A DNA stretch of 56,110 nucleotides from Octopus bimaculoides (Eukaryota), in assembly GCF_001194135.2 (NCBI RefSeq), contig NC_068982.1, positions 143,229,343-143,285,452 on the forward strand, read 5' to 3'. Both the position numbers and the translations under genes were made by a program. Shown piece after piece: positions 301-52,729 of the stretch. The notes under the pieces were generated by a model. The model made no database searches, had not been told where the DNA came from, and worked only from the letters and a program-made list of their open reading frames with translations. Numbering within the stretch: the stretch's first letter is position 1; each line of letters starts with the position of its first letter.

Positions 301-1089
301 TCTGTAGAGGCTAGCAGCTTCGTTAGTAAACCAGACAAAATACCTTTCAAACTTCGGCTGTAGCTTCTTGCTTTGAGTTCAAATCGCACCACCGTCAACT
401 TTGTTTCCCATCTTTCCAAGAAGCAAACTCCTTATCACGCAGCCAAGCGTCTTCTTTCATGTTTTATAGCAGATGAAGATAAATCGTACATATTTCAGCC
501 GGTTTCATCACATGAATATGAATAACTGTCACCAACCGTTGCAGTCTGTACGTCATAACTGATATAAGCGTTGGTCGGTTTGTTATGGCTGGTTGGTTGA
601 TTGGTTTGTTTCTACAGTCACACTTTACATTGCAGAGAGACTGTGGGAGAGGATGTAAAAAGGAAATACCGAAAGAGTTAACATAACAAGCATTAAATGA
701 ACGTCTTAAAACTTTCTGAAAAACACGAAATTTTTAATGACGAAATTTTACAGCGACAGATTTTCAATGGAGTAGATTGCAATTATCTTGATAAAATCTA
801 GAAAAATAAGACATATTTATTGCAAATATACAAATGATGAATTTGTTTTATGTAGTATTTATTTTAAGATAATAAATAGGTTTTTGTTTCTTTAGAAAAT
901 TAGTATTCATTTCATCATTTCGTATAAGCAACGAGAAATTTGATGAGAGCTAAATCAGAATTTATTGTATACCAATAATACTGATGGAGACAAAAGTATC
1001 CTTCCAAAAATTATCCGTCATAAGAAGGGTAACTCTTAAAATCAGTGGTTTTGATTGGGGTCCACATCACCCTTGGCGGATCCCTACTA

Positions 1090-1487
1090 TTTTACTATTT
1101 CACTCGTTTCAGTCATTTGACTGCGGCCATGCTGGAGCACCGCCTTTAGTCGAGAAAATCGACCCCAAGGCTTATTCTTTGTAAGCCTAGTACTTATTCT
1201 ATCGGCCCCTTTTGCCGAACCGCTATGTTACGGGGACGTAAACACACCAGCATCGCTTGACAACCGATGCTGGTGGGTGGACAGACACACAAACATATAC
1301 ACACACACATACATATACACATATACGACGGGCTTCCTTCAGTTTCCGTCTACCAAATCCACTCACGAGGCTTTTGTCGGCCCGAGGCTATAGTAGAAGA
1401 CACTTGCCCAAGGTGCCACGCAATGGGATGCACCCGGAACCATGTGGCTCGTAAGCAAGCTACTTACCACACAGCCACTCCTGCGCC
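1090..1487 (-). mobile_element. tRNA-derived SINE, family B, full length
   Basis: Minus head ggcgcaggagtggctgtgtggtaag (A box) ... gggtgcatccc. Internal (TA/CA)n tract, 3' gcggtgctccagcatggccgcagtcaaatgactgaaac and a short-repeat tail. Closely similar to 1709-2170 and 24525-25014. Confidence 0.9.
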
Positions 1488-1708
1488 ATATAAAATTTAG
1501 TTATTCAAGTTTATGTGTAGTAAATTGGATACATATCAATAATACGTAATATATTTTAAGGTTTTTTTTTTTTTTACACAATTACAAATAATATTTAATT
1601 ATACAAATATAATCGGAGTTTTATTAAAACATTGTACGGATATGAAGGTCCAGCAGAGTATGATAGGAAGGGAAGGGATTCATAAGCAAAAAGGGGTTGG
1701 AAAACAGT

Positions 1709-4967: not shown

Positions 4968-5406
4968 AACAAATTATCCATTGCTTCCTCCATAAATTAT
5001 AATCGGTTTACAGTACGTTCGCGACCGGCAGTACATCCCTCTTCATTTTCCCAGCAGATGTCAAACTATTGAATTATTTAACAAAGAATTCAAAATATTT
5101 CCTACAACGTTCAGTTCAGGATTTAGAGAGATACAAATTATATTATAAATATTTTATGAATATGAAACATGTTTTGGATTATTATGTAAGCCAAATGACT
5201 TATTTTCCCCTATCACATAAATCATGTCGTAACTTTTAAAATTGCTGTCTCTATAGGCATATTTTCATGGACGCAACCATATCTATCAGTCCCCATCTCT
5301 CTCTCCCTCTCTTTTTTTCTCTCTCTTTCTCTTTTTCTCTCTCTCTCTCTCTCTTTCTCTCTATCTATCTATCTATCTCTCTCACTATACACATATATCT
5401 CCTCTC

Positions 5407-5619
5407 TCTTTACTCTTTTACGTCTTTCAGTCATTTGACCGCGGCCATGCTGGAGCACAGCCTTTAGCTGAGCAATTCGACCACAAGACTTATTCTTTGT
5501 AAACCTAGTACCTATTCTATCGGTTTCTTTTGCCGAACCGCTGGGTTACGGGGACGTAAACACACCAGCATTGGTTGTCAAACGATGTTGGGGGGACAAA
5601 CACAGACACACAAACATAT

Positions 5620-5655
<36 letters not shown>

Positions 5656-5689
5656 GTATGTATACGACGGGCTTCTTTCAGTTTCCGTC
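5407..5689 (-). mobile_element. SINE family B lacking the tRNA head, abutting an RTE fragment
   Basis: Matches the 3' two-thirds of 1090-1487 and stops at gtttccgtc. Confidence 0.85.
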
Positions 5690-5988
5690 AGCGTTTTGTG
5701 CGCTTGTCTTCTTCCAATTCACTGTAAAACAGCCTTTTGGGTAGTCGATTGTCAGGCATTCGAACCAAGCGGACTACTCACCTGACTTACGCTCTCCTCA
5801 GCAGTGTGTAAATGTCTGGCAGATCAGCTCAAGAGAGGACCTACTTTTTCCAGGTGATTTTCGACACCTTTTTAAGACAGTTTATGTGGAAGCGGCTCAG
5901 TTGTTGTACGTGGCGTTCGTAAACCGTTCAAGACTCGCAGCCATACAATAAGTGTGGTGAGATGAAGAGCCGAGCAAGGTGAGAATGT
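5690..5988 (-). pseudogene. RTE-clade (BovB-like) LINE reverse-transcriptase C-terminal fragment
   Basis: Minus translation LLYGCES*TVYERHVQQLSRFHINCLKKVSKITWKK...LPDIYTLLRRA...VRMPDNRLPKRLFYSELEEDKR, matching the RTE pattern LLYGCETW...RMPDxRLPKxxFYGEL, with stops and frameshifts. Confidence 0.85.
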
Positions 5989-7797: not shown

Positions 7798-8558
7798 AGT
7801 TGTTGAAATAATCTATGTTTGATACACATAATCGATTTTATATTTTATGCTCTGAGTTCAATACTCATCGCAAACGACTATACTCATCCGATTGCGTGAG
7901 TATAGCAGATCGAGAGAATTTGGCATTAATTTTGTGCTGGAGTGGAAGCTGTTAACATAACTCCTCTCCTCGAATTTAATATCTCTGTGCGTAAATTAGA
8001 ATGTTTATTTATAATTAGTAAGATTAAATATATTACATTCATCCTAGATTAGTAACTTTTAGGTAAGAATAATTAATTGTATTAGAATATCAATTGATAA
8101 ATATCGAATATAGGGCTAATGGCATATGAGCTAAATCTTTGGAATATTCAGCTGGTTACTGAGTAATTTCACGAATAACTACTCAGTTACTCGAAACGAA
8201 TGCTCATCGTTTTAACCAACGGAGAACCCCCTATATTTTGTGGCCGTATTTGTATGAAATGATACACATATAAATATTTCCCTGTTAGACCTCAAGATAC
8301 ACCTTTACTAAATTCCCCGTCAAGGAGTAAATTTTCCTCTTACTTGAAGTTCTCTACGAAAGCCATGATTTATAATTACTGATATTCCCTAGAAGCTATC
8401 CTTAAGTTGTACAACTGTGTTTATCTCTTGTTGTCTACAGAAAGTTTACAAACAAAGCTGCCCGGCACATACGTAAGCGATGCACACTGTCTACGGTGTC
8501 TAAGGGAGGCAACTCTACAGTACCTAAGAGACATCGACATCACATAATACCAAGACAT

Positions 8559-8930
8559 TTGTTGGCACTCCGTCGCTTACGACGTCGAGGATTCCAGTTG
8601 ATCCGATCAAAGGAAAGCCTGCTCGTGAAATTAACGTGCAAGTGGCTGAGCACTCCACAGATACGTGTACCCTTAACGTAGTTCTCGGGGAGATTCAGTG
8701 TGACAAGCCTGGCCCTTTGAATTACTGGCACAACAGAAACAAGAAGTAAGAGTGAAAGAAAGTTGTGGTGAAAGAGTACATCAGAGTTCGGCACCATCCC
8801 CTGCTGGAGCGTCGTGGAGCTTTTAGGTGTTTTCGCTCAATAAACACTCACAACGCCCGGTCTGGGAAACGAAACTGCGATCCTATGACCGCGAGTCCGC
8901 TGCCCTAACCACTGGGGCATTGCGCCTACA
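8559..8930 (-). mobile_element. tRNA-derived SINE, family C, full length
   Basis: Minus head ggcgcaatgccccagtggttagggcagcggactcgcggtc (A box) ... tttcgtttccc. Collinear with 9708-10106. Confidence 0.9.
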
Positions 8931-8957
8931 CAACACCAACACATAACACCAACACAT

Positions 8958-8990
<33 letters not shown>

Positions 8991-9012
8991 GCTGAACGAT
9001 GTGCAGCAGTAA

Positions 9013-9185
9013 TATAAACCAACGAGGGAGCCTCTTAGTCTGTGTTTCACCTGCAAGATAGAGGAGGTTGCTCTAAATACTATATTCATACTTACACCGT
9101 CGCGAAAAAAATGAATGGATTGTCATGGATGGATAACTTATGATCATATGTTTGTTACATCATAACTGACTCGAGCTTAAACACA
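9013..9185 (-). repeat. Old interspersed repeat family E. Other copies at ~17270-17455 (+), ~18840-18990 (-), ~30845-31000 (+), ~31115-31300 (+), ~50782-51000 (+).
   Basis: Shared degenerate blocks such as gatcaaagcattccagccatgacc-like, ga(a/g)atttggttgc(t/c)atttctag and gaggctccctcgttgg recur in these intervals. Confidence 0.5.
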
Positions 9186-9707
9186 GCAGCAACCACATCT
9201 GTATAGTAATAATACCTTTATTCTGTGTAAAGCCCTGAAACTTTCTTGACTTTTAAAATGAAGCTATTTTACAAAAAAAGAACAAGAAAAAGAAAACCTG
9301 CTCTGCCCACTTTCCACAATTCTCATAGCAACCATTCCTCGATGCTAATTAAGATGCTAATTAGCATTCCTAAAAAAAAAATCAGGTCATTACATTTGAG
9401 CCATTTTAACTTCTACTTCCACAATGTAATGAAGTGAAACATGAAATTATTATCATATAAATTAGTTTATACAAGAAACCATATTTCGTTAACAAATTTT
9501 GATCCAAATAATTGGATTCTTCAAATATGATGTGTGGTATATGTAAAATAAATCCAGGTTTACTAGAGATTTAGGAATTACCTAAACTTGGAGTTAGGGA
9601 TTATGTAAGACATTCTCCATGTTAAGTTAAACAGCGCTATGGAATATTTAGAAAGCTAATTAATCCTACTCTATACAGGTATATATACTAGTGTGTATGC
9701 TTTGGCT

Positions 9708-10106
9708 TGTGGAGGCGCAATGGTCCAGTGTTTAGGGCAGCAGACTCGTGGCCATAGTATCGCGGTTTCGATTCCCAGACCGGGCGTTGTGGGTATTCAT
9801 TGAGCGAAAACACCTAAAGCTCCACGAGGTTCCAGCAGGGGATGGTGGCGAATCCTGCTGCATTCTTTCACCACAACTTTCTCTCACTCTTACTTCCTGT
9901 TTCTGTTGTGCCTGTTACAGGCACAACAGGGTCAGCATTGTCACACTGTGTCACGCTGAATATCCCCGAGAACTACGTTAAGGGTACACGTGTCTGTGGA
10001 GTGCTCAGCCACTTGAACGTTAATTTCACGAGAAGGCTGTTCCGTTGATCGGATCAACTGGAACCCTCGACGTCGTAAGCGACGGAGTGCCAACAACAAC
10101 AACAAC
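9708..10106 (+). mobile_element. SINE family C, full length, with (CAA)n tail and ~83-bp flanking direct repeats
   Basis: Head tggtccagtgtttagggcagcagactc...ggtttcgattccc (A and B boxes), 3' gttccgttgatcggatcaactggaac hairpin, (caa)5 tail. Confidence 0.92.
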
Positions 10107-13100
10107 AAGTTAAACAGCGCTATGGAATATTTAGAAAACTAATTTATTCTACTCTATATAGGTATATACTAGTGTGTATGCTTTGGCTACCATGGGTAAT
10201 TTCAGGAAATATGTCATACATACAATTATTAGTATTCAACTTTTATCAAATGTCTTGGTCTTTATTCAAGATAATGAAATGAATACTAATTTTCAGAGTA
10301 AACACATTTATTACGTGAAGATGAAATTAAATAAAATATATTTCTCATTTGCATATTTACAATAAATATATCTTGATAGTTTTCTGAATTTTATCAATAT
10401 AATTGCAAACTCCTCCATCGGATACTTATCTGCAAAAATGTCTTGGTAACTCTCTTTTACACACTCTCACTTTCTCTCTCGCCCTCTCTCAATCTCTCTC
10501 TCTCATCTCCTCTTTATACCATGTAAGGTGTTATTTGAGAAATTAACCAACTAGCCAATCAACCAACATTTATATCGGCTTTTATTATATAGAGATAAGC
10601 AATATTGAGTTCATATGCTTCCCGTCCCGTCACACCATAAAGGGGGAAATCTTCATTTCTGTATGTAAGTGAAACAAAAATATTCCCCAATTAATCAACT
10701 TTAAGTAAAATATTCAGATAATATTTTACCAGCCTATAATTATGAAGTCGCTTATAGGATTTATAGTATTAAATATAATGATTCATGGTAGCAATCTAAT
10801 CAGATATAAAAGAACAGCTTAATTTGAAGGGAAGAAAAATATTTTTAAAAAACTATTATATTTCAGTACAATTGTCCTCACCTGGCACTGATCTTGATTA
10901 TAAAATAAAAACTGTCGATCAATCATAATCGAAGCATACCTTTTCTGAAAGAGAACTGTAATAACATTAATTATGTTGCTATGGAATATTATCACGTTGA
11001 TTTCAGAGAAGCAAATTGACTCTTAGTCATTTCACGTCGATAAAAATTAATACCAGTAATAAATGATCTCGACTCAATGGATTAGATCGGGTCCTGTCGA
11101 AATTACAGGCCTCATTTGTAGTGAAATTACATCAATCTTTGTACTCATCGTCTCTAGACTAGCGAATCATCAATCTACCACGAAATGAGAGATTATATCT
11201 AAAACATGTACGAGTGTGAAAATGAGGAATAATAATAATAATAATGATAATAATAATAACAATAACAATAATCATTTATGTGAAGCGTTCATAGTAGGAT
11301 AAATGATGTCTGTCGTCAGAATGTTATTGTTATCAATCTTAATCGCAATAAAACAGCATGTTCCATTTCCACTGCAAACTCTAACATGTTAGCAATAGAT
11401 TCATGATTAAATCTTTGGAGGAAAATTTACGAAATAACTTTTTTTTAAAAGAAGATGTATAGAAAAACAGCGAATTACGACTATTGTAGTCTAAAGACGA
11501 GTGTATCATGAAGGAGATTAAAGACAATTCTGTTATATTAACAATAGACACTAGTAGTAAGTGCAGTCTATTTGATGGTCAAAGATAGCATAAATTTGTT
11601 AATAGATAGTGTATTTAATTAGAAGCCATTCTTTCTCAAACTCGTGGTTGGTTGTGTTTTTGAAAGATTTAAACCAATAATAGTATTATTCTTTTTTTTT
11701 TTTTCCTTTTTTCAAAAATCTACACGAAAAGCTTGAAAACATTCTCTGTTCTTCGAATCTTTATTCATCTGTCACATTTGAGGTGAATTCCCATAAATAA
11801 TCGATGATACGCTGCTCTTACATTTCTTGTTATGTTTTTTTCTGCTTCATACTTTTACATTTTCCCACTTTACTTTTCAAATATAAGTCTTCTCTGGTCT
11901 ATGTTAAATATACATTATAATATTTTATATTACATATTATTTCTTGCTTCTTTCGTTCTTTTTTTCATTTTAGATAGCGTCTCTGGCAGGATATATTATT
12001 AATTCTAACTATTTTGTTTTTACAGTTGTGTAACTGGAAATGTAGATTTTGACTTAACTAAAAGTTTCTAATAGTATAAGAAATTAAGATATAAATTCCA
12101 AACTTTTTTCTTTTTCTTTTTGGTAGGAAGTTTAATTTCAGATTGTGGATCCAATTCCTTAGTAACATTGTATTGGCATTTCAAATGAGCTGTCCAAGAT
12201 AAGGAAAACAAGTTGACATATTTATCTATTATTGATTACATACCTATGAGCCACGAGATGACAAGTAATTTTGTAAAGTTTCTAAATGGTTTAATACTCG
12301 ATACATTGTTTACAGCTGCAAGCTGGCACACTACACGGAAGCCATTAGAAGGGAACTATATTTATAATCGATATTTCGTCTGGTTTCTTTTCGTATGTCG
12401 AGTCAGAAGGTCAAATCATTTCTTATCTAAAGAGAAACTTGTTCTATAAAACATCAATATTTTTATCGTTATAGTTTCACATACATTTTTAAAAGGCTCA
12501 TTTGTAGCTGCTTTTGGTCACTGTTGTTGTTGTTGTCGGATTTATTGTTGCAGTTACTGTCTTTTATCCGGCAATGGTTCTTACCCATAGGAATATCTGA
12601 AGTGAGCAACAGTAAGCAACAAAACAGTCGCCAGTTATACTGTAGACACACCTCTTTTGAATAACTAAACGTATGTTCTTTTTTGTCGGCAAAGAGCAGG
12701 GAATTCGCATAGCATTTGTTTTGGTGTACTTCATTGTATAGCTTTAAAGCAGTCTACAGCAGCTGAAGATGATAATGCTTACCTATACCCATGCATACAT
12801 ACCATACACATACGAAATGCTATCCATGTCTGCGGCCACGTGTACACGTACTTATACATATTTATAAGCGTGTTTTCATTTCCATATATGTGAACATGCA
12901 TCTATAGATATATATATATATATATATANNNNNNNNNNNNNNNNNNNNNNNNNNNNNNNNNNNNNNNNNNNNNNNNNNNNNNNNNNNNNNNNNNNNNNNN
13001 NNNNNNNNNNNNNNNNNNNNNNNNNNNNNNNNNNNNNNNNNNNNNNNNNNNNNNNNNNNNNNNNNNNNNNNNNNNNNNNNNNNNNNNNNNNNNNNNNNNN

Positions 13101-16574: not shown

Positions 16575-16615
16575 TACGGAGATGTACTTGCATAGCAAGT
16601 GACTTAATCTGAAGC

Positions 16616-16814
16616 AATTGCCGCGTGGAAGGTGTTTATAAGCCATTTAAAAAAACACACAAAAAACATTAGATTCACTTCAACATTTAAATCCGTTCTG
16701 AAGTTTTGTCTGCGAACAGGTCGCGGTTTCAAAGCGACGAAAAAATGTTGAAGTGAATCTAACGGGATTTTGTGTGTTTTTAAATGGCTTATAAACACCT
16801 TCCATGCTGCAATT
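16616..16814. mobile_element. Foldback/MITE-like element with ~72-bp inverted arms
   Basis: Left arm 16616-16688 and right arm 16743-16814. Perfectly complementary blocks tggaaggtgtttataagccatttaaaaa (28 nt) and ttagattcacttcaacattt (20 nt), 54-nt spacer. Confidence 0.8.
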
Positions 16815-16904
16815 AGATGTATACATATATATATATATATATATATATTACACCAGTATTAAAGATATTTCACTTCATGTTACGAGTAGTAATAGTGAAT
16901 GTGT

Positions 16905-17195: not shown

Positions 17196-19417
17196 TACTA
17201 GTAGTAATAGAAATTGTTGTTATGGGTACCGTTGTTGTTGTTGTTATTAAATCTCACGTCAAATGTGATACAATAGGCTGATAATCAGAGACATTCCAAG
17301 CGTGACTTCGTCCATTTATATGAATATACGGCTGTATTATCAAATGGTGCGTTACTTTCTTAATTATGATAAATCTGTTATTGTTTAGCTGCAGGCCTGC
17401 CATGATTTAGTAGCTCAGTGATCAAAATCATTCTAACAATGATTATCTCATCTGTGTGGGGCGGGGGGGATTTTATTGTCAAATGAGATCCCTGATTTAT
17501 GACACTGATATGCATTTCAGTAAACCTGACTATGACTTATTGTGGTCGAGTCACCACAGAGAAACTGCCTTGTTGTGTATTTGAGTGTTATTGTCGCAAA
17601 TCCAACCATTTCTTAGAAGCCGCCTTGATGGTTCTTGACAGCCTTTCTGTCTGCTGTTATATGGTTATCCAGTTCACAAAGCTATTGATCATACAAGATC
17701 ATAACCATTTATATTTGTTCATTATGTTTGTCTTATATATTAGTCTGATTTGAAACGTTATGGCTAAGTTACCTTTAGAACCGGACTTAAAACTTTACTT
17801 CACTAGCTGCAATGAGGATTTCGAAAAGTACTATATAATGTTTTTGAAAATCCACACAAATGTTTCAATGTCTTCCAAAACTCATTACTTGCAATTTTCC
17901 TTAACACAAATTATAACTGATAGAAATAAGGTATATCATAGTTTTCTGTATTTTTCTAAATGTTTCACTTTAATCATATATTAACTTTCCATGTGAAATA
18001 CTCCAGTTAATTTCATTAGATCTCCAACACGTCATGAAGTCAATGTTTATGATAACCGCTGTTTTAGAACTTGTACGACATCTAATCTAATTTTATAGCT
18101 GAATGTTGCTGCCAAAGATAAATTATAGTCAGGAGGGAAAAAAATCAGACAGTGTTTATGACTCTTTACGTGGCTTCCAAGAATTGTAGAAAGGAGAAGA
18201 CGAGGTATTTTCAAACCGAAGTTCTAACCCGAAGTACGCTGAAAGGAGACAACATGCCACGTGCTAGTGTTACTATTTGGCCAACAATAGTACCGTACTT
18301 TACACCTTTTCTTGTAATTTTTAAATGCAAAAATCTTTATTGACTTGAAGACATTTTAATGAATGGGCACTGGGACTCAGTTATTCCAAGATAAGTTCTT
18401 TTCTTCTACTCACAGTTGTTGAGTGTTAAATGTGTCCTGTTTCGTACATTATGTTATTTTCGCTAGAAAACTTGCGTCTATACTGTATATGTCCAATGTT
18501 ACCGTCTGTATTGAATATGTCCAATACTGACGTTTATGCTGTATATTTTCAATGTTTACTATCTCATACTAGAGTATTGTAGTTCGCTTGAAGCATTGTG
18601 TATTGTTTGTAAAGAATAAAAAGTTTAGAATGGTACAACAATACACTATAAAGCAACAAATGGACTATATACCTGTTGTAATTTGATTATCTATAGTCCG
18701 ATGATATTTCGCAATTACAATTCCTTCTTCAGAATTTCTTAGATGGAGTCTCTGCAGATGGAGTCCATTTTTTTGTTTTATAGTGCATTGTTGTACCATT
18801 CTAAACTTTTTATTCTTTATCTCATACTATAAAAAATGCTTCCTAAATGACCGCCCGAGGAGACAGAAATAGCAACCAAATTTTCCTAAAGGCGCACACC
18901 ATAGAACAGTTTTACTTTCTTTCAGAATTGAATGCTGATGACCGGAATAGATTTGTTCTATCAGTGTTGATCTACAGCTAAGAACAAAACAACAGCAATA
19001 GCAAATACACGTACAATGGCTGGCATTGTAAATGTCTCTTAATGACACAGCTGTTGGTTTCAATATTCAAATGAGTTTCCAGAACTATTTCGGCGTTGTA
19101 AATATATCCATACATCATTTTCAGTTGCACTGGTAACACGAACACAGACTGACGCTAATCTATAACTGACATACATACATTACGCAGAATTATGCACATT
19201 CCACTGTTGATTCTCTTCTATATAGTTACTATATATGTACCCAACTTACCATTCTTCAGCTTGGTACTGTAACACTTGTCCAACTGTAACACTTGTCCAA
19301 CCCAAAAAATATTTTCGTTAATTATGTGTCGTTTTGCGTTGGAATCTCTCAGGCTGAGAATGATTCACTAGCTGTAATTTTATATTGTCTATGTAAAATA
19401 AATAAAAAAGAAATTAT

Positions 19418-21444: not shown

Positions 21445-22345
21445 TTTCAATGTAGAATCCTCTAACATCAATGCGCTTGTTCCAGCCTCTTCGAGAAGGC
21501 CCCATGGAATTCCTTCAAACTGAAGGTGTTCAGGATCAATCTCATAGCCTCCTTTATCTTCCTAATATCTTCAATACTGCCCATAATGTTCTCCTTCAGC
21601 TTGAGGAACAACAAAATGTCACAGGCAGCAAGGTCTGGACTGTAGGATGGGTGAGTTGCTTACCAGGATTTAATTGTGGGCTGGTACGTTGTCCGTGCGC
21701 AGGTGCAATCGACCCGAGTGAAAGAGTTCTGGCCTTTTCGATGAAATCTCTTTGTGGTCCCCTCCCTCAAAACCTCCACCAAGTACTCTTTGTTGACCGC
21801 CTGACCAGAGGGAACCCAGTAGATGATGCCCTTAAAATAAGGGATAATCATAAGCTTTTCTTTGGACTTGCCTTGTCTGGCCTTCTTTAATCTAAGGAAC
21901 CCAGAATGATGTCATAGGACACTATTTATTTGTCACTAGTTCATAACGGTAAATCCAGATTTTGCCACAGGTCACCAGAGAAACTTACGAAATGCTTGGT
22001 TGGAAGTAATCGTTGCTGTCACCAACGCGTCTTTCCTACGTTTTGTCACTGAGCGTCCTCACAGCAAATTTTGCACATGTTCAGATCTTCAAGAATAATT
22101 CTGTGCGTCTTTTCCACATCAACTCCATACTGTGTGCCTATTGTTTTTATAGACACATGACGGTCTTCACCCAGGAAGTTGTAAAGTTTCTTAACCAGCT
22201 CTGATGTTTCGACGTCTCTTTCTCTCCTACACCTTTCATCGTCTCTACCATGCTTATACCTCTGGTATCAGCGCAAAACAAATACTCGGCTCATACAGAT
22301 TAAAACTTAAGCTGCCTGGGGCATTTCAAAAGTTTCTACGGTTTT
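21445..22345 (-). pseudogene. Mariner (Tc1/mariner, DD34D-type) transposase pseudogene
   Basis: Minus fragments read FLGEDRHVSIKTI, WIYRYEL (WxYxYDPE), KKARQGKSKEKLMII, VPSGQAVNKEYLVEVLRE and HPSYSPDLAACDILLFLKLK (YSPDLAP motif), with many frameshifts. TIRs were not confidently seen. Confidence 0.9.
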
Positions 22346-22826
22346 GACCCGTTTAACACAAAACTTGATTGCGTAGCGAGCGTCCAAATTGTCTTTACTT
22401 CCCGACTGCATTCTGTAAACTGGGCAGCTGTGACAAGCAGTCTTTAGTAGTGCATGTTGAAAGGGCGATTACAGCCGTGTCCATCAATCTGGTATAAAAA
22501 GTTGATAGTTCAGCTAATAAGATGTATGATGATGAGAAGATAAAGTACAGTAAATCTATGACAGGTATAACTGCCTGTACTACAAAAAAGTCTCAAGTCT
22601 GTCGTAGGCACACCCCTACATACATACATACATACATACATACATACATACATACATACATACATACAAACATATATATACATAATATATATATTAGTTC
22701 ATGATAGAATATAAGGATAAAAATCACGTTAATAATTTTTATTAGGTAGTCAGCATGCTCTAAGAATTTATTGGCAATTTATCCATTAAATTAATAATAA
22801 TATACATATGTATATATTTTATTAAT

Positions 22827-22898
22827 GGAGCAAGGGCGAAAACCGCCTATCTCGACACTTCAAGCATGCTGGAGATAGGTCGTTTTCGCCCTTGCTCC
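22827..22898. other. Isolated 72-nt GC-rich hairpin (27-bp stem, 18-nt loop)
   Basis: ggagcaagggcgaaaaccgcctatctc and gagataggtcgttttcgcccttgctcc give 25 Watson-Crick pairs, 1 G-T and 1 mismatch. Confidence 0.9.
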
Positions 22899-23194
22899 CA
22901 CAATATAATCATATACACATGTATATTATTACTAATTTTATATATGTATGTGTGTGTGTATACATGTATATATATGTATATATATATATACATATATATA
23001 TGTATATATATATATAGATATATATAAACGTAAAATGAAAACAAGACACAAAGGATTCCGCGGTACACGTGTTTCAAGCTTTATACACAAACAGTCGTTG
23101 CATCATTATGAGTATAAAGTTGATAGGAAGATACATATACATGTTTACATACGCACATATACATATATATATATATATATATATATGCGCGCGC

Positions 23195-23787: not shown

Positions 23788-24524
23788 NNNNNNNNNNNNN
23801 NNNNNNNNNNNNNNNNNNNNNNNNNNNNNNNNNNNNNNNNNNNNNNNNNNNNNNNNNNNNNNNNNNNNNNNNNNNNNNNNNNNNNNNAGAGAGAGAGAGA
23901 GAGATACACACACCCACGCTTATGAAATAAGTTTTGAATCTCTTGTGTCTTGCATGTAAAGTTTACATTTTACTGGAGTAGTTATAAATTTCTATCTATG
24001 CTAGCTTTACATTAAAATATATTCCTCTCATGACAAATAGATTTATTTAAAAATTATAATGTATTTGATGTCTTTAAATATGTGTGTTTTATATGTTTCT
24101 ATATTTAAAAAGATGTCAATTATTCAGAAAGTTCGATGTGATTCCGTTGATTTATTTATAACTTGTATTTCATCATAAACATTTTTTCCTGAAATTTTAA
24201 ATAATTCTACAACGTACAGAGTTAACAAGCACACAACAGAAACTCTTAAAGTATTATTAATATATAAGAAGTATGTCCAACCATATCATATTTCATATTC
24301 TAATAGATATAACATATACTCAATACATATGTATTGTAATTCATATCCTATTAGATTTAATATAGATATTGAATGTGTGTATTATAATACTGGTATAATA
24401 CGTAACAAGTTATATATTTTTATTGAGTGATTCATGCAGTTTTCATTTTGCACAGGTTACAAAGTTTTATTTCATTTACACAATCAGGAAATATAAATAT
24501 AAATGCAGGATTATCCAATAATAC

Positions 24525-24808
24525 TCATTTACTCTTTTACTTTTTTCAGTCATTTGACTACGGCCATGCTGGAGCACCGCTTTTAGTCGAGCAAATGGAC
24601 CCCAGGACTTATTCTTTGTAAGCCTAGTACACATTCTATCGGACTCTTTTGCCGAACCGCTAGATTACGGGGGCGTAAACAAACCAGCATCGGTTGTCAA
24701 GCGATGTTGGGGGAAAAACACAAACATACAAACATATACACACATGTATATATACATATATACGACAAAGCGATGTTGGGGGGCACAAACATGCACACAC
24801 ACACATAC

Positions 24809-24851
<43 letters not shown>

Positions 24852-25014
24852 GACGAGCTTCTTTCAGTTTCCGTCTATCAAATTCACTCACAAGGCTTTG
24901 GTCGGCCCGAGGCTATAGTAGAAAATACTTGTCCAAGGTGCCCCGCAGTGGGACTGAACCCGAAACCATGTGGTTGATAAGCAAGCTACTTACCACACAG
25001 CCACTCCTATGCCT
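24525..25014 (-). mobile_element. SINE family B, full length, with internal tandem duplication
   Basis: Collinear with 1090-1487. aagcgatgttgggg...tatacgac occurs twice (~24690-24855). Confidence 0.9.
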
Positions 25015-25721
25015 ATGAAACATTTGATTAATAATATGAAGCGTTTAATTAATAATAAGTTGAATATTAAAATCGCAAAATATAAACAATTTATTTTCTC
25101 TTTTTATCTCTTTTAATCGAGTGGTCAGGTAAAGTCTATGACCCTTTACAATTGTCTATAAATGTAATGGGAACGAGAAAAAGAGATACCTACAAACCGG
25201 AAATTTAGTCCGAATGATTGCATCGCAATGAACTCGACACCGATTGAACGCACTCAGGGTGGGTCGTCGTGGTGTTAAACTGGGCGAAGTATTAACCGTT
25301 TGAACCCGCAAGTATGATTTCGTTTGACGCAAAAGTGTCCGGCCGCATGATTTTGTGTTTACGTTTAAAAATAACGGTATTTCTGCCAGTAAGGCGTTAA
25401 CACAAACTATGAGGCCGTCCGCTTTTGCGTCTTGTAGAGATATAGTGAAACGAAATCGCACCCGGTAAAGCATACTACGAACCAATTAGGCAATGCCGTA
25501 GTTTAACCCTACAACGCGAAGTTTGAACGAACAACGCTAGTTTCGCAGAATTGCAGTTTCTCAAATTTATCACCCTCTATTTCACATAACCCGAAACAAC
25601 GAAATATAAATTGATGAACGAAAGATAAATTGATGTCAATGGTATTTTAACATGGGGCGAAATCTGATACTCTTTCTCTGTTTTAGCTTTTATGTAAATA
25701 CGTACGTATGTATGTATGTAT

Positions 25722-26299: not shown

Positions 26300-26878
26300 T
26301 ATGGAATAACAGAAAAATGACAGTATAGACACAGGCCAGAAAAGGTCACAGAAAATGAGAAAGCAGCCACACTATGGGATATGCCAATACACACAGATAG
26401 AGAAATTAAGGCCAATAGGCCGGATATAGTTGTCAGAGATCATCAAGAAAAAATTCTTTCAAATCGATGTATCAATTGCAACGGATGATAATGTTTCTCT
26501 AAAAGAAATGGAGAAACTTTCAAAATACAAAGACTTGGAAATAGATGTAACTCGAATGTGTAATCTAAAAACAGAAACAATTCCTATCATAGTAGGTACG
26601 TTAGGTATGATAAAAGAAATATTCAGACAAATACATAACAAAAACACCAGGACTAATAAGTACATATAACATGCAGAAAATAGCACTACTAGACACAACT
26701 AGCACTACTAGGCACCTACATAAAACACTTTCAATACAGTAACTATAAGAGTATCACAACAAACCACAGCAAATACCCAAGGCACAGAGATGCGCTTGGT
26801 AGTGCAGTGTGTTGTCTCTTGAGGTCTCTGGGTGAAACTTGGAGTCAACTTGTACAAATATAAAGTAAAAGTGAAACA
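26300..26878 (+). pseudogene. R4/Dong-clade non-LTR retrotransposon 3' end (restriction-like endonuclease domain plus 3' UTR)
   Basis: RPEKVTENEKAATLWDMPIHTDREIKANRPDIVV / FQIDVSIATDDNVSLKEMEKLSKYKDLEIDVTRM / KIALL, with the PD..D and K..KY REL motifs and frameshifts. Flanked on both sides by (TAA)n. Confidence 0.85.
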
Positions 26879-27005: not shown

Positions 27006-27551
27006 NNNNNNNNNNNNNNNNNNNNNNNNNNNNNNNNNNNNNNNNNNNNNNNNNNNNNNNNNNNNNNNNNNNNNNNNNNNNNNNNNNNNNNNNNNNNNNN
27101 NNNNNNNNNNNNNNNNNNNNNNNNNNNNNNNNNNNNNNNNNNNNNNNNNNNNNNNNNNNNNNNNNNNNNNNNNNNNNNNNNNNNNNNNNNNNNNNNNNNN
27201 NNNNNNNNNNNNNNNNNNNNNNNNNNNNNNNNNNNNNNNNNNNNNNNNNNNNNNNNNNNNNNNNNNNNNNNNNNNNNNNNNNNNNNNNNNNNNNNNNNNN
27301 NNNNNNNNNNNNNNNNNNNNNNNNNNNNNNNNNNNNNNNNNNNNNNNNNNNNNNNNNNNNNNNNNNNNNNNNNNNNNNNNNNNNNNNNNNNNNNNNNNNN
27401 NNNNNNNNNNNNNNNNNNNNNNNNNNNNNNNNNNNNNNNNNNNNNNNNNNNNNNNNNNNNNNNNNNNNNNNNNNNNNNNNNNNNNNNNNNNNNNNNNNNN
27501 NNNNNNNNNNNNNNNNNNNNNNNNNNNNNNNNNNNNNNNNNNNNNNNNNNN

Positions 27552-42290: not shown

Positions 42291-42934
42291 ACAAGCGTCA
42301 AACTCAAGGCCTGCCATCCACATCCGGTCCAATAGATGATTATATCCAGCCCTCGAGAGAATTTTAGGCAAATATTTTTTAATGGCCTGGCGATATGAAG
42401 TGTAAACCACAAATTCCCCAATTTTGCCGCCTTGTCGAACGAATGGCTGCTTGAGAGCATTCCCACGTCAATTAGAACAAATTAAAATGATAGTTGTGTT
42501 GTGCGTGGATGTTCGTCATTGCAGTAACCTAGCAACGTCCTGTAACTCGTTTTGGATTGTCGCATAAGAGATGAAAGTAGTGTAGTTCCCGGATATTGCA
42601 TCACTCCTTCTCACTTGTGCCATACCAATCAAACGTCTATCGGCAGATGCAAAGTCTTAATTTTAAATCAAAGCTAGCTGTTAAAATGGCCAGGAGAAAA
42701 ACTGATTCTGAAAACAGAGTTTTTCAAAGCTACTGGGAGGCTCAATATATGTTTATCGATATTGCCGGTAAACCTGTGTTTCTAATTTGAGGAGATAATG
42801 TGACTGTGGTCAAGGACTATAATCTAAGGCGGCACTACCAGACTAATCATCAAGACAAATCGGAAAACTTGAATGCAGAACGAAAGCTACAGAAGGTAGA
42901 AGAATTGAAGACGAATCTAACATCACAGCAGACA
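42291..42934 (+). pseudogene. hAT (Buster/SPIN/GTF2IRD2-like) DNA transposon 5' end with transposase N-terminus (ATG 42686)
   Basis: TIR-like caagcgtcaaactcaaggcc. 42686-42934 read in one frame as MARRKTDSENRVFQSYWEAQYMFIDIAGKPVFLI*GDNVTVVKDYNLRRHYQTNHQDKSENLNAERKLQKVEELKTNLTSQQT, the family pattern KPVCLIC...KEYNLRRHY with both zinc-finger Cys lost. Confidence 0.85.
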
Positions 42935-42939
42935 ATACA

Positions 42940-43056
42940 TTTCTATATTCAAGAGATAAGGAATTATGTACATTATTTACATTTGACGGATATTTGTCCT
43001 CATTTTGTTTGTTGTTAACACAACGTTTCGGCTGATATACCCTCCAGCCTCTCAGT
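42940..43056 (-). mobile_element. Penelope-type terminal-repeat relic with degenerate hammerhead motif, truncating the hAT copy
   Basis: Minus ctgagaggctggagggtatatcagccgaaacgttg reads as CUGA(-)GA, stem ggctg/cagcc, GAAAC, GUU. Confidence 0.55.
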
Positions 43057-46159: not shown

Positions 46160-46392
46160 TAAATTAGGAAAAGAAAAATTCTTTACTACTCTAGGTACAA
46201 GGCCCCAAATTTTTGGAGAGGGTGGGCAGTCGATTAGATCGACCTCAGTACACAACTGGTGCTTAATTTATCGACCCCAAGCGGATGAAAGGCAACGTCG
46301 ACATCAGCAGAATTTGAACTCAGAACGTAAAGACAAATGAAATACCGCTAAGCATTTCGCCCGGCGTGCTAACGTTTCTGCCAGCTCGCCGC
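46160..46392 (-). mobile_element. SINE family A, full length
   Basis: Well preserved: aatttgaactcagaacgtaaagacaaatgaaataccgctaagcatttcgcccggcgtgctaacgtttctgccagctcgccgc. Confidence 0.9.
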
Positions 46393-46420
46393 TTTATAGG
46401 AAGAGGAAAATTATTATTAC

Positions 46421-46790
46421 TAAGGCAAGAAACTGGCAGAATCGTTGCTAAGTTCAAATTATGTCGAGGTTGACTTTGATTGTCATCGGTTCGCGGTCGA
46501 TAAAATAAATACCAGTCATGTACTGGGGTCGATATATCCGACTAGTTCCCTCCCTAAGCATGTAAGGTTTTGTGCCTATGGTAGAAAGAATCATTATCAT
46601 TGTTAAGTCGACGAGCTGGCAGAATCGTTAACACGGCGGACAAATTTGCTTGGCTGTATTTGCGTTTTGAGTTCAAATTCCAATGAGATCGACTTTGCTT
46701 TCTTGATTGATAAAATAAGTTCAATTGAGCACTGGGGTCGTCTATGATATCAACCTTTCCTCCCCTTAAAGTTGCTGGCCATTTTCTTGT
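46421..46790 (+). mobile_element. Two tandem family A SINEs (46421-46598, 46606-46790). Further degenerate A copies at ~7800-7990, ~11030-11120, ~43740-43890, ~45940-46130.
   Basis: ctggcagaatcgtt heads and gtcgataaaataa(a/g)t.cca...actggggtcg bodies. Confidence 0.8.
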
Positions 46791-47190
46791 CTCCTTTTGT
46801 ATTCGCGTTGTACGAGCTTACAGCATTCACTAACAATATGGCTTATGCTTTCTCCCTTCTCAGAGAACATCCTACACTGTGGCGAGTCAGTGCTTTTATG
46901 AATGTAATATTTGGAGTAGTTTGTTTTGAAAGCTTGTTCTTGAGCGCTGCACACTAATGTCTCAGTGGGCTCTTTTAAGTCACCTTTCTGTAACCATTGC
47001 CAACTTCTATTCCAGTCAATCTCATCTTTATTCTTCAAGAACTGACTGTGCATTCGTTTTCTTGTCCTGCCAAATTTTCTTCATCTGCTCTCTCTGGTCT
47101 TTCTTAAATCGTGTTGGCTCTGCGGCTTCGTTCACTTTAAGGTTCCCTGCATTTTCACTGCAGATTGGGGTTTATGTTTTGTAATCCGCT
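46783..47190 (-). pseudogene. R4/Dong-clade fragment, post-RT region with CCHC zinc knuckle
   Basis: ORF 46766..47053 reads SWQWLQKGDLKEPTETLVCSAQEQAFKTNY...SPQCRMFSEKGESISHIVSECCKLVQREYKRRQEN, the C-x2-C..H..C..L...Y..RH pattern in degenerate form. Confidence 0.85.
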
Positions 47191-50092: not shown

Positions 50093-52729
50093 TGGAGAGA
50101 AGAACCTGGTATGCACGAGCGACTGCTGGTTTTCCACAAAAAACCTTGCCCAGATTTGTGCCTTGGAGGGGAAGTTTCTGGGTGCAATCCCATGGCCATT
50201 CATGAACGAAGGGGGTCTTTATTCTTACATTTTATTTTTAGCACAAATTAGATCCGACAATTCTAGGAAGAATTGCAAACTTTAATCCCAAGGTAGAGCT
50301 AAATATAAAACAATCCTTGGTATGTAATATTTGCGATGTAGTTCTTTACCACCTACTTACTTAGCCGTTTTTTGTTGCCGAGTATATCACTTCTTGTTTT
50401 TCTTTCTGATTTGTTGTGCGGGAGAAAAATGCCTTCTGGTGTTTTCCCATAGTTGATTCCGATAGAAAGGGAAAAATAGAGTTGAAGTGTTGTACGTTTA
50501 TTACTTTATCATTATTCTTTCCTTGTTTCAGGCATTAAATTGCGGTCATGCGGGGGTACCGCTTGGTAGAATGAATGAATCGAATGAATCGACCCTAGTA
50601 CTTTTTTGTTTTTTAAACTTGGTACTTATTCACTCGATTTCTTTTGTCGAACCGCTAGTTTACAGGGACATAAACACACCAACACAGGTTCTCATGTGGT
50701 GACGGAGGATGAACACAGACAAAGAAGCTCACACACACTTACATACACGCATACACAAACATATAGCTTGTTTTTGTTGTTGATAAACCCTAGGTCAGGT
50801 TTGATCGACCATACCTTTAATTAAAGCATTCCAGCCGCGGCTTAACCACTTACTTCTAGACATTCTGTATATAAGACTATAGCTCTATTACATTATACTA
50901 TGTGTTCAATCAATTTGAAGGGAGTACAATGTGGTTTAAGGAAAATTTGGTTGCCATTTCTAGCAGGTCGGATGACGTCGAAGAATCTCCCATATTGGCT
51001 TTATGACTAAAAGTGAGACAAGTATATGATCTTAGTAGTGTTGAAAGTCTAAACGTGATTAACAAAACAACGCATTTTCGCCGATTGTATCAGCTGTATA
51101 GTAACACAACCAAATTCCACTCAGATAGCAACGGAAAATGAAATGCAAGAAATGATGGTGAAGAGATTCTCAATTATTCATATATAATTCCAGCTGTATT
51201 TAATTCCATAAGGAGACCAACACAATGTGTCTCTCCCGCTTAAACGTCTATTGAATCAAATTTAGCCTGTGACCTAAGATTAGCGTGGCCTTGCACAACC
51301 TATACTTCGACGAGATTATAAACAACTTTACATCCTCCAAGATCAATCCGTTTTCAGCTGCCATATATAGAATGAAATGAACCAATCTGCTTGTTCGTTC
51401 TATCAAACTATTTAGACAAAGCAAAGAAAATAACACAAAAATTCCAAATGAAAGACTTCGAAAATTTCTTATGCTTGTAATTCCTCGATACAGAGTTCTC
51501 TCTGGCGTCTGTTTTATCATTAATCAGTTTAGATAAAGATCAGTTGTTTTGGTGAAGATTTCTTCCATATATTAGTTCTCTCACATGAACAAGGAATAAA
51601 GATTAAGATCTTATTGAATAAGGCTGGAAAGAGTTTAAAGAATATACGGTATGTCAAGAACTAGAGAATTCTTCCTTAATTATAAGCTGTCCAGGGTACT
51701 TGAAACATCAAAATGCATGAAGTAAGTGGCGTTCTTTTCAAAAACGTCCTGATAGAGTTTTGAAAATGACTTTCGTTTCGGTAATATGAACACAATTTTA
51801 TATAAAATATTCAATCTTTTCTATGATATGAAACGCAATAGAATATGGACAGCCTTTATATCGCGGACTTGGCTATAGATTAAACTAGGATCAAAGATTT
51901 CCGCTGAGAGAATATGTATAAAAATAATTGATTGAATGATTCAACCTTTTTTTATCCTTCCTTTTTTCTTTCGCTTAGATCTATAAGTGAAAGTTATAAT
52001 GAAAAGGAAGAGAAAATTCCTTCCGATTTTATAAGTCACATATTTCATCCTTCTCTTGTTAGATGCTTCCAGAAACTTTTTAAATCTAAGATAGGCTTCG
52101 CAGAATGTTATGAATATCCTTATAAGTCAGCATAGATTATGCTTGATTTCGGCCAGCGATAGAGAAAAAATCCCTCTATAGAATTAGTAATAAAGAAGAT
52201 AAAAAACACGTAGAAATCCTTACAAAAAAGTAGATGAATAAAATATATATTCAGTGTGACTGAGAAATATATATGATATCATTAGAAATATCCAATATAT
52301 AATATTATATGAAATTAAATGACAAAAGAGTAGAAAGCACTGCGCTGTTTCTTATTGAAACGTTGATGATTGCCTCAAAATTGTATTAATTCTGGTAATT
52401 TCTTTTGGGGAAAGAGGAAGAAATATGAATATAAATATCAACTGTGTTTAAATACTCTTGTGTAATTAATAGGAATGATAGAAAGGTAGAATATAAGCGA
52501 GGAAATCGTGAACAACAAGAAGAATAGTGATGCTGAATACCGACGAGAATATTATATAAAAAAATAGTAATGCACCTACCTACCTACCTACCTGTTTGTC
52601 TAGTTATTTTTCTTCGCACAGACAGACTCTCATGTAAGCATATATAACTGTTTCGTTCCGGATATTTGTTTTGATCTCTTTAATAACACATGCTCTTACT
52701 CTCTTACCGTCTCTCACTTACACAAATAT

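What the first reader, a model, noticed from the sequence alone, without database searches (positions are those of the whole stretch)
22827..22898. Solitary 72-nt GC-rich near-perfect hairpin in AT-rich intron: candidate miRNA precursor, ADAR substrate or minimal MITE
Seen: 27-bp stem (25 WC, one G-T, one C/C) with an 18-nt loop. It is unrelated to any other repeat in the window and embedded in (TA)-rich sequence. On the host-gene (minus) strand the G-T pair becomes an A-C mismatch. Established: A-C mismatches in dsRNA are preferred ADAR sites, and coleoids have extensive A-to-I editing and many lineage-specific neural miRNAs. Caveat: the stem is shorter than the ~33-35 bp of a canonical Drosha substrate, and flanking pairing is not evident.
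Basis: partly seen in the sequence, partly recalled or inferred. Interest (0 to 1): 0.7.

Follow-up and report, generated by a model that had tools for sequence, protein, structure and literature searches.

The report
GC-cored DNA palindrome in repeat-rich DNA
The hairpin is real and far beyond chance, but it is the core of a longer ~151-base DNA palindrome, one of several fold-back repeats in this transposon- and microsatellite-rich stretch, and nothing obtainable here shows it to be a microRNA gene, an editing target or a mobile element.

Summary
Bases 22827-22898 form a 27-bp stem (25 Watson-Crick pairs, one G-T, one C/C) with an 18-nt loop. RNA MFE is -47 to -49 kcal/mol (z about -10). About 4e-6 such hairpins are expected by chance in the window.

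Two points need correcting. Pairing does continue into the flanks: the inverted repeat runs from about 22788 to 22938 and shares its centre with the core, giving about 65 bp on the minus strand (-85.9 kcal/mol). The hairpin is also not solitary in kind. Unrelated fold-backs lie at 16607-16820 and 18590-18842.

No Rfam family is matched. No pri-miRNA motif sits at a plausible position on either strand. The stem is too short (27 bp) or too long (about 65 bp) for a canonical Drosha substrate. There is no target-site duplication and no second copy in 56 kb. The A·C mismatch on the minus strand has a 5' G, the least favoured ADAR context.

Genome-wide copy number, orthologue conservation, expression and editing could not be tested, because no cephalopod genome or RNA data are reachable. 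Organism, host gene and intron status are unverified.

Best reading: a fairly young, probably functionless inverted duplication of the template-switch type. It would fold into dsRNA only incidentally. A MITE is the main rival. Interest is low.

The parts
22788..22826 (.). Outer left arm of the palindrome, AT-rich (AAATTAATAATAATATACATATGTATAT + 11 poorly matched bases). It is itself nearly self-complementary around CATATG.
   Evidence: It matches the reverse complement of 22911-22938 at 26 of 28 positions. Its self-reverse-complement score is 28.
22827..22853 (.). Left arm of the GC-rich core, 27 nt, 59% GC.
22854..22871 (.). 18-nt spacer or loop, GACACTTCAAGCATGCTG. It contains an off-centre 8-nt palindrome AGCATGCT at 22863-22870.
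   Evidence: plus direct reading of the sequence.
22872..22898 (.). Right arm of the GC-rich core, 27 nt. It differs from perfect complementarity at two adjacent positions: G-T and C/C on the plus strand, A·C and G/G on the minus strand.
22899..22938 (.). Outer right arm of the palindrome, AT-rich (12 poorly matched bases + ATATACACATGTATATTATTACTAATTT).
   Evidence: The partner of the 15-mer at 22788 is found at 22924-22938, the mirror position.

Best explanation
The feature is an imperfect DNA palindrome of about 151 nt (22788-22938). Each arm is about 66 nt, AT-rich on the outside and GC-rich on the inside, and the arms surround an 18-nt spacer.

Most likely origin (inferred): one DNA-level inverted duplication, either replication template switching or fold-back priming. 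It would have happened in a quasi-palindromic, microsatellite-rich tract. A single such event copies a stretch as its reverse complement next to the original and creates a perfect hairpin at once. The arms have since picked up about 8 substitutions and 1 indel.

Most likely function (inferred): none of its own. If the region is transcribed as part of a longer RNA, it would fold into a 27-bp GC-rich duplex, or about 65 bp on the minus strand. That duplex could be edited by ADAR or cut by Dicer incidentally.

Shown: the structure, that it is not chance, its extent, that it is unique in the window, and that signatures of known families are absent.

Inferred: the template-switch origin and the lack of function.
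For: - The palindrome cannot be chance, so a copying mechanism made it.
- The inner GC-rich pairing and the outer AT-rich pairing share one centre of symmetry to within 1 nt. One inverted duplication of a 66-nt arm explains this automatically. A 72-nt element inserted into a pre-existing palindrome would have had to land exactly at its centre.
- The outer arms are low-complexity AT sequence (TAA repeats plus the motif TATACATATGTATA, which recurs all over the window). That is unlike a transposase-binding terminal repeat.
- There is no target-site duplication at either possible boundary (reading).
- There is no second copy in 56 kb.
- The neighbourhood is full of quasi-palindromic microsatellites. 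Template switching between imperfect repeat arms is described as homogenising and expanding them (abstract of PMC13100816).
- Base rate: template switching produced more than 6,000 miRNA-like hairpins in primates, and at least 18 of them became miRNA genes (PMC10710096).
- Other unrelated fold-backs lie in the same window, so such structures are common here.
- The arm differences give a G·U on the plus strand in the core and G·U on the minus strand in the outer arms. No strand is consistently favoured, which is what neutral transitions would produce.
Against: - No outgroup or orthologous sequence could be obtained, so the ancestral state, the defining test of a template-switch event, is unknown.
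- Differences are not spread evenly along the arms: 2 of 27 in the core, 2 of 28 at the outer end, but 4 mismatches and 1 indel in the 11-12 bases between. A single event followed by uniform decay fits this poorly.
- 66-nt arms are, to my own knowledge, at the long end of reported template-switch events.
- Genome-wide copy number is unknown, so a dispersed family (MITE or another transposon fragment) is not excluded.
- Lack of function is a default assumption, not a result. Expression was not testable.
Confidence: 0.45

Rival explanations
1. It is one copy of a small palindromic non-autonomous DNA transposon (a MITE or fold-back element of 72 or about 151 nt). A transposase encoded elsewhere would move it by binding its terminal inverted repeats.
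For: - The size, the lack of coding capacity and the whole-length inverted repeat fit a MITE.
- The region is rich in transposons, with a degenerate mariner 400-1,300 nt away, retroelement and hAT-like fragments and SINE copies.
- Other fold-backs of MITE-like size lie in the window.
- The GC content changes sharply at the core boundaries, as an insertion would produce.
Against: - There is no target-site duplication at 22826/22899 or at 22787/22939. A TA on both sides needs a 1-nt asymmetry and means little in AT-rich DNA.
- There is no second copy in 56 kb.
- The arms do not resemble the end of the neighbouring mariner, which has no recognisable terminal repeats left.
- The outer arms are low-complexity AT sequence, not a typical terminal repeat.
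- If the source is an octopus, annotated MITEs cover only 186 kb of the 2.8-Gb O. vulgaris genome, in 74 families (PMC13282606 supplement).
Confidence: 0.27
2. It is a young, lineage-specific small-RNA gene: a miRNA precursor, or a long-hairpin endogenous siRNA locus. It would be transcribed with a host transcript and processed by Drosha/Dicer or by Dicer alone.
For: - The hairpin is stable on both strands and has an 18-nt loop.
- Near-perfect hairpins born by template switching or from MITEs are documented sources of new miRNAs (PMC10710096).
- Octopuses have many lineage-specific miRNAs (PMC9699675).
Against: - No Rfam match reaches a gathering score. The best sub-threshold miRNA model over the hairpin is mir-335 at 27.9 bits against 64.
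- The stem is 27 bp or about 65 bp, not about 35 bp.
- MFEI is 1.18-1.23, more stable than typical precursors to my own knowledge.
- No UG, UGU or CNNC motif lies at a plausible position.
- No seed-site k-mer of annotated octopus miRNAs matches the arms in the held part of the supplement.
- Base rate: at least 18 miRNA genes from more than 6,000 such hairpins in primates. Octopus has 164 annotated miRNA genes, against roughly one fold-back per 15-25 kb in this window.
Confidence: 0.07
3. It is a selected ADAR-binding or editing structure in an intron, or a dsRNA element that regulates splicing or transcript stability.
For: - A duplex of 27-65 bp is long enough for ADAR.
- An A·C mismatch lies on the minus strand.
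- In O. vulgaris most A-to-I editing is in introns and 3'UTRs, where hairpins are frequent (PMC9699675).
Against: - The A·C adenosine sits in 5'-G-A-C-3' next to a G/G mismatch. In human data an upstream G is the most depleted neighbour, with enrichment 0.32 in helices and 0.23 in loops (PMC3091650).
- Nothing shows transcription, the transcribed strand, or even that this is an intron.
- Being a possible substrate is a property of any transcribed palindrome and is not evidence of selection.
Confidence: 0.04
4. It is an assembly or library artefact, such as a chimeric fold-back read or adaptor remnant, in a draft scaffold.
For: The window is a gapped draft with 10 runs of N. Palindromes are a known artefact class.
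Against: - The arms differ at several positions and by an indel, whereas artefactual fold-backs are exact.
- The nearest gap is about 890 nt away, at 23788.
- The core has no match in plasmids, phages, prokaryotic genomes, metagenomes or viral contigs.
Confidence: 0.03

Closest known systems
Hairpins created by template-switch mutations (Löytynoja and colleagues; PMC10710096)
   Same: - A near-perfect inverted copy lies next to its source with a short spacer.
- It occurs once.
- It lies in non-coding, possibly intronic, DNA.
- It yields a miRNA-like stem-loop in a single step.
   Different: - The ancestral state is not known here.
- The arms (about 66 nt) are longer than most described events.
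- The stretch between the inner and outer blocks is poorly matched.
Palindromic MITEs such as human MADE1 (an 80-bp mariner-derived element and source of the miR-548 family; recalled from my own knowledge)
   Same: - A short, almost fully palindromic element near mariner DNA.
- It folds into a long perfect hairpin that could feed small-RNA pathways.
   Different: - There is no TA target-site duplication.
- There is no similarity to the neighbouring mariner end.
- No second copy was seen, and family membership is untested.
Canonical animal pri-miRNA hairpins (MirGeneDB criteria; Drosha substrate rules)
   Same: A stem-loop with more than 16 nt of arm complementarity and a loop of at least 10 nt.
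   Different: - The stem length is wrong (27 or about 65 bp against about 35).
- Pairing is nearly perfect.
- No processing motifs are present.
- No family match, read evidence or conservation evidence exists.
AT-rich palindromic repeats and quasi-palindromes in microsatellite DNA
   Same: The outer arms are AT-rich and self-complementary, and they sit among TA/TG/TACA microsatellites.
   Different: The centre is a unique 72-nt segment of 56% GC, which simple repeats do not produce.

Membership tests
Animal miRNA precursor | Hairpin with at least 16 nt of complementarity between the arms and an apical loop of at least 10 nt | tested here: met
   27-bp stem and 18-nt loop on both strands.
Animal miRNA precursor | Stem of about 35 bp bounded by single-stranded basal flanks (Drosha/DGCR8 ruler) | tested here: not met
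   The core stem is 27 bp. With the flanks the duplex runs on to about 65 bp.
Animal miRNA precursor | Primary-sequence determinants: basal UG at -14, apical UGU/GUG, CNNC at +16-18 | tested here: not met
   None is present on either strand for 5p starts at hairpin positions 4-8. These motifs were defined in mammals and are not obligatory.
Animal miRNA precursor | Match to a described miRNA family | tested here: not met
   No Rfam hit reaches a gathering score in the window. The best sub-threshold miRNA model over the hairpin is mir-335, 27.9 bits against 64.
Animal miRNA precursor | About 22-nt reads from both arms with 2-nt 3' overhangs and homogeneous 5' ends | not testable with these tools
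   No small-RNA data are reachable. The held supplements of PMC9699675 carry no precursor sequences, since a let-7 control string was absent.
Animal miRNA precursor | Presence in a second species (criterion used for octopus miRNAs in PMC9699675) | not testable with these tools
   No cephalopod genome is reachable. The protein collection holds no close relative of this genome.
MITE | Terminal inverted repeats, small size and no coding capacity | tested here: met
   The whole 72- or 151-nt unit is an inverted repeat. Only short junk ORFs cross it.
MITE | Target-site duplication flanking the element | tested here: not met
   At the core boundaries the flanks read TTAAT and CACAA. At the outer boundaries they read CCATT and TATAT. 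There is no identical direct repeat at either boundary.
MITE | Many dispersed copies in the genome | not testable with these tools
   Only one copy lies in the 56-kb window. The six-frame peptide search found nothing. That search is uninformative, because none of 10 window ORFs is in that collection.
Template-switch (TSM) hairpin | Inverted copy adjacent to its template, with both blocks sharing one centre of symmetry | tested here: met
Template-switch (TSM) hairpin | Ancestral or outgroup sequence lacking one arm, explained by a single four-point switch | not testable with these tools
   No orthologous locus is obtainable.
ADAR substrate | Double-stranded RNA of roughly 20-30 bp or more | tested here: met
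   Met in silico only.
ADAR substrate | Favourable context at the proposed site: A opposite C, 5' U or A, not G | tested here: not met
   A opposite C is met, but the 5' neighbour is G and is itself in a G/G mismatch. In human data an upstream G has enrichment 0.32 in helices and 0.23 in loops (PMC3091650).
ADAR substrate | Transcription of the locus and A>G RNA-DNA differences | not testable with these tools
   No RNA-seq is reachable, and the host gene is not identified.
Helitron 3' end | Short GC-rich hairpin about 10-15 nt upstream of a CTRR terminus inserted at A|T | tested here: not met
   The nearest CTAA|T is 32-35 nt downstream, at 22930-22933. A 27-bp stem is far longer than typical Helitron hairpins (reading; typical values from my own knowledge).

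The most novel reading that the evidence does not exclude
The palindrome is a recently born hairpin-RNA gene caught soon after a template-switch event. It would be an intronic, lineage-specific miRNA or endogenous-siRNA precursor in a cephalopod, expressed with its host transcript and possibly edited by ADAR. That would make it a non-primate example of one-step de novo small-RNA gene birth.
Probability: 0.05. Interest if true: 0.5.

Novelty: new member of a known kind. Interest (0 to 1): 0.18.

Why it matters
As it stands it matters little. It is one more short DNA palindrome in a genome stretch where fold-backs occur about once per 15-25 kb. Being able to fold into dsRNA is a property of all of them.

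It would matter modestly if small-RNA reads, or conservation with compensatory changes, were found. It would then document how new hairpin RNAs arise in a lineage noted for miRNA expansion and heavy RNA editing.

The practical lesson for the scan is that a near-perfect, very stable, solitary hairpin in repeat-rich DNA signals recent DNA-level duplication. It is not evidence for an RNA gene.

Tried and rejected
1. Exact-pattern scans of the two-arm pattern and of a 22-nt arm pattern found nothing in metagenome contigs, prokaryotic genome contigs or viral contigs. These collections are not expected to hold animal DNA.
2. A full-text search for the 17-mer arm found 0 papers.
3. A six-frame peptide search across the hairpin against 5.8 billion proteins found 0 hits. 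An exact look-up of 10 window ORFs found none in the collection. The first negative therefore says nothing about copy number.
4. I tried to identify the organism and fetch related genomic DNA through the neighbouring mariner and a retroelement RT fragment. The best identities were only 39-62%. They came from ENA metagenome-type assemblies and an unidentified GCA assembly. Named hits were sea star, corals, anemones and a sea cucumber. The species was not identified and no orthologous locus was obtained.
5. A Pfam scan of long stop-free minus-strand segments in 1-40 kb found no domains. The host gene and intron status stay unverified. The plus strand and 40-56 kb were not scanned, because no follow-up look-up was possible.
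6. The supplements of the octopus miRNA paper hold no precursor sequences. Only seed-site k-mers could be checked, and none matched.
7. The Rfam sub-threshold hit to the plastid psbA 3'UTR hairpin (36.6 bits against 54.3) was rejected as a generic match of a hairpin in AU-rich context.
8. The mir-297 and mir-466 sub-threshold hits at 22940-23010 are TG/TA microsatellite.
9. Rejected on sequence grounds: a link to the neighbouring mariner end, a Helitron 3' hairpin, vector or adaptor contamination and tRNA or SINE origin.

Full report
**1. The observation**

The sequence at 22827-22898 reads GGAGCAAGGGCGAAAACCGCCTATCTC / GACACTTCAAGCATGCTG / GAGATAGGTCGTTTTCGCCCTTGCTCC.

- The reverse complement of the right arm differs from the left arm only at adjacent positions 18-19 (CG against GA).
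- The stem therefore has 25 Watson-Crick pairs, one G-T and one C/C, around an 18-nt loop, exactly as described.
- On the minus strand the two exceptions become G/G and A·C.
- As RNA the 72-mer folds at -47.1 (+) or -49.0 (-) kcal/mol. Shuffles average -18 to -20 (z about -10, 0 of 200 as stable). As DNA it folds at -27.2 kcal/mol.
- With the window's base composition, about 4e-6 stems of this quality are expected in 53 kb. A copying process made it, not chance.
- The core is 56% GC and the 100-nt flanks are 17-19% GC.
- A scan of the whole window for stems of at least 18 bp with at most 2 mismatches and loops up to 60 nt found 17 loci. This is the only one whose arm GC exceeds 30%. Most of the others are TA/TG microsatellite palindromes.
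- The core has no other copy in the window, by pattern search with 3 mismatches and by word-7 blastn.

**2. Two corrections**

*Pairing continues into the flanks.*
- The left flank AAATTAATAATAATATACATATGTATAT matches the reverse complement of the right flank, AAATTAGTAATAATATACATGTGTATAT, at 26 of 28 positions. Between this block and the core lie 11-12 poorly matched bases with one indel.
- The flanks are low-complexity, and the left one is nearly self-complementary, so I tested the part that is not palindromic.
- The 15-mer at 22788 has its reverse complement, with one mismatch, at 22924, the mirror position. Among 1,354 comparable AT-rich, non-palindromic 15-mers in the window, only 8 (0.6%) have any such partner anywhere in a 75-nt range downstream.
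- The palindrome is therefore about 151 nt (22788-22938), and its inner and outer blocks share one centre.
- On the minus strand the two outer mismatches become G·U. A 191-nt transcript folds into about 65 bp at -85.9 kcal/mol (z -13.7). The plus strand gives -74.7.

*The hairpin is not unique in kind.*
- An unrelated fold-back at 16607-16820 is stronger still (-109 kcal/mol, z -16).
- Another inverted repeat has 81-nt arms at 18590-18666 and 18762-18842.
- That is roughly one fold-back per 15-25 kb.

**3. Context**

- The window is a gapped draft of a repeat-rich animal genome, with 10 runs of N and 25-42% GC in 2-kb steps.
- Upstream of the hairpin, on the minus strand, lies a degenerate mariner transposase at about 21471-22410. 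Its relatives carry Transposase_1 and HTH_48 domains at 39-48% identity.
- A (TACA)n tract follows at 22617-22670. TA/TG microsatellite follows the palindrome at 22939-23030.
- Neither the mariner end nor any other repeat resembles the arms.
- Retroelement RT fragments in the window are 40-53% identical to proteins of sea stars, corals, anemones and a sea cucumber. This fits a marine invertebrate.
- Nothing close enough to name the species was found.
- No Pfam domain was found in long stop-free minus-strand segments of 1-40 kb.
- 'Coleoid', 'intron' and 'host gene on the minus strand' therefore remain unverified.

**4. Tests of the three proposed readings**

*miRNA*
- No Rfam family reaches its gathering score anywhere in the window. 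Over the hairpin only weak sub-threshold hits appear: plastid psbA 3'UTR at 36.6 against 54.3 bits, and mir-335 at 27.9 against 64 bits.
- The stem is 27 bp, or about 65 bp with the flanks, not about 35 bp.
- MFEI is 1.18-1.23.
- No basal UG, apical UGU/GUG or CNNC at +16-18 is present on either strand for plausible cut sites.
- The octopus miRNA study required presence in two species and found 164 genes (PMC9699675).
- Its held supplements contain no precursor sequences, as a let-7 control showed. None of the listed seed-site k-mers matches the arms.

*ADAR*
- The duplex is long enough to be a substrate.
- The highlighted A·C adenosine lies in 5'-GAC-3' next to a G/G mismatch.
- In a large human data set, A opposite C is favoured (18.5% edited). 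An upstream G is the most depleted neighbour, with enrichment 0.32 in helices and 0.23 in loops (PMC3091650).

*MITE*
- The unit has MITE size and is an inverted repeat.
- No target-site duplication exists at either boundary, and no second copy is present in 56 kb.
- Annotated MITEs cover only 186 kb of the O. vulgaris genome (PMC13282606 supplement). That figure is relevant only if the source is an octopus.

**5. What could not be tested**

- No cephalopod or other animal genome can be searched by DNA with these tools.
- Pattern scans of metagenome, prokaryotic and viral collections were empty. Plasmid and phage BLAST matched only the AT-rich flanks.
- A six-frame peptide search found nothing. 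None of 10 window ORFs is in that collection, so this negative does not bear on copy number.
- Expression, editing and orthologue conservation are untested.

**6. Interpretation**

- A structure this far from chance must come from a DNA-level copying event.
- The shared centre of the GC-rich and AT-rich blocks is explained most simply by one inverted duplication of a 66-nt arm. An insertion into an older palindrome would have had to land exactly at its centre.
- The outer arms look like local microsatellite-type sequence rather than transposase-binding ends. There is also no target-site duplication.
- I therefore favour a template-switch or fold-back origin (0.45) over a MITE (0.27).
- The uneven spread of differences along the arms, and the lack of an outgroup, keep this open.
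- Base rates argue against a dedicated RNA function. Template switching made more than 6,000 miRNA-like hairpins in primates, of which at least 18 became miRNA genes (PMC10710096). Fold-backs are frequent in this window.
- I put a small-RNA gene at about 0.07, a selected editing or regulatory structure at about 0.04, and an assembly artefact at about 0.03. The arms differ at several positions, which exact artefacts would not show.

**7. Verdict**

This is a real feature that was accurately described in its core, but it is larger than stated and ordinary in kind. It is a new member of a known kind (a short DNA palindrome or fold-back), and its interest is low unless expression or conservation data show otherwise.

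Noticed in passing
window 16607-16820: A second, unrelated fold-back of about 205 nt. It has 47-nt arms at 91% and inner 20-nt arms at 100% complementarity. RNA MFE is -109 kcal/mol (z -16). It ends next to a (TA)n tract and is stronger than the hairpin under study.
   Followed up: partly
window 18590-18666 and 18762-18842: An inverted repeat with 81-nt arms (86% identity) and a 95-nt spacer. A 12-nt direct repeat TATCTCATACTA lies at 18560 and again inside the right arm. It may be a MITE-like element.
   Followed up: partly
window 21471-22410 (minus strand): A degenerate mariner-type transposase with frameshifts and stops. Its relatives carry Pfam Transposase_1 and HTH_48 domains at 39-48% identity. 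No terminal repeats are recognisable.
   Followed up: partly
window 26321-26666 (+) and 46769-47080 (-): Fragments of a retroelement (RT C-terminal / zinc-binding region). They are 40-53% identical to proteins of sea stars, corals, anemones and a sea cucumber. The plus-strand copy ends in a (TAA)n tail that runs into a gap at 27006.
   Followed up: partly
window 954-1500, 1697-2130, 5257-5780, 24427-25015, 50466-50820: At least five copies of a SINE-like repeat. They share the translated signature FQSFD.GHAGAP and are each joined to TA/TG/TACA-type microsatellite.
   Followed up: no
window 46260-46700 (minus strand): Copies of another short interspersed repeat (…GGGGTCGATAAATTAAGCACCAGT…), two of them in inverted orientation (46340-46394 and 46605-46661).
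   Followed up: no
window 42581-43015 (+): By eye this translated fragment looks like the N-terminus of hAT/ZBED-type transposase-derived proteins (…NRVFQSYWEAQYMF… / …NLRRHYQTNH…).
   Followed up: no
window 22940-23010 and 22600-22669: Sub-threshold Rfam hits to mir-297 and mir-466 (51 and 38 bits against gathering scores of 85-90). They are TG/TA and TACA microsatellites, not miRNA genes.
   Followed up: yes
window 9903-9929: A 27-nt near-perfect palindrome (52% GC). It lies inside a region where copies of another repeat sit in both orientations (about 8400-10140).
   Followed up: no
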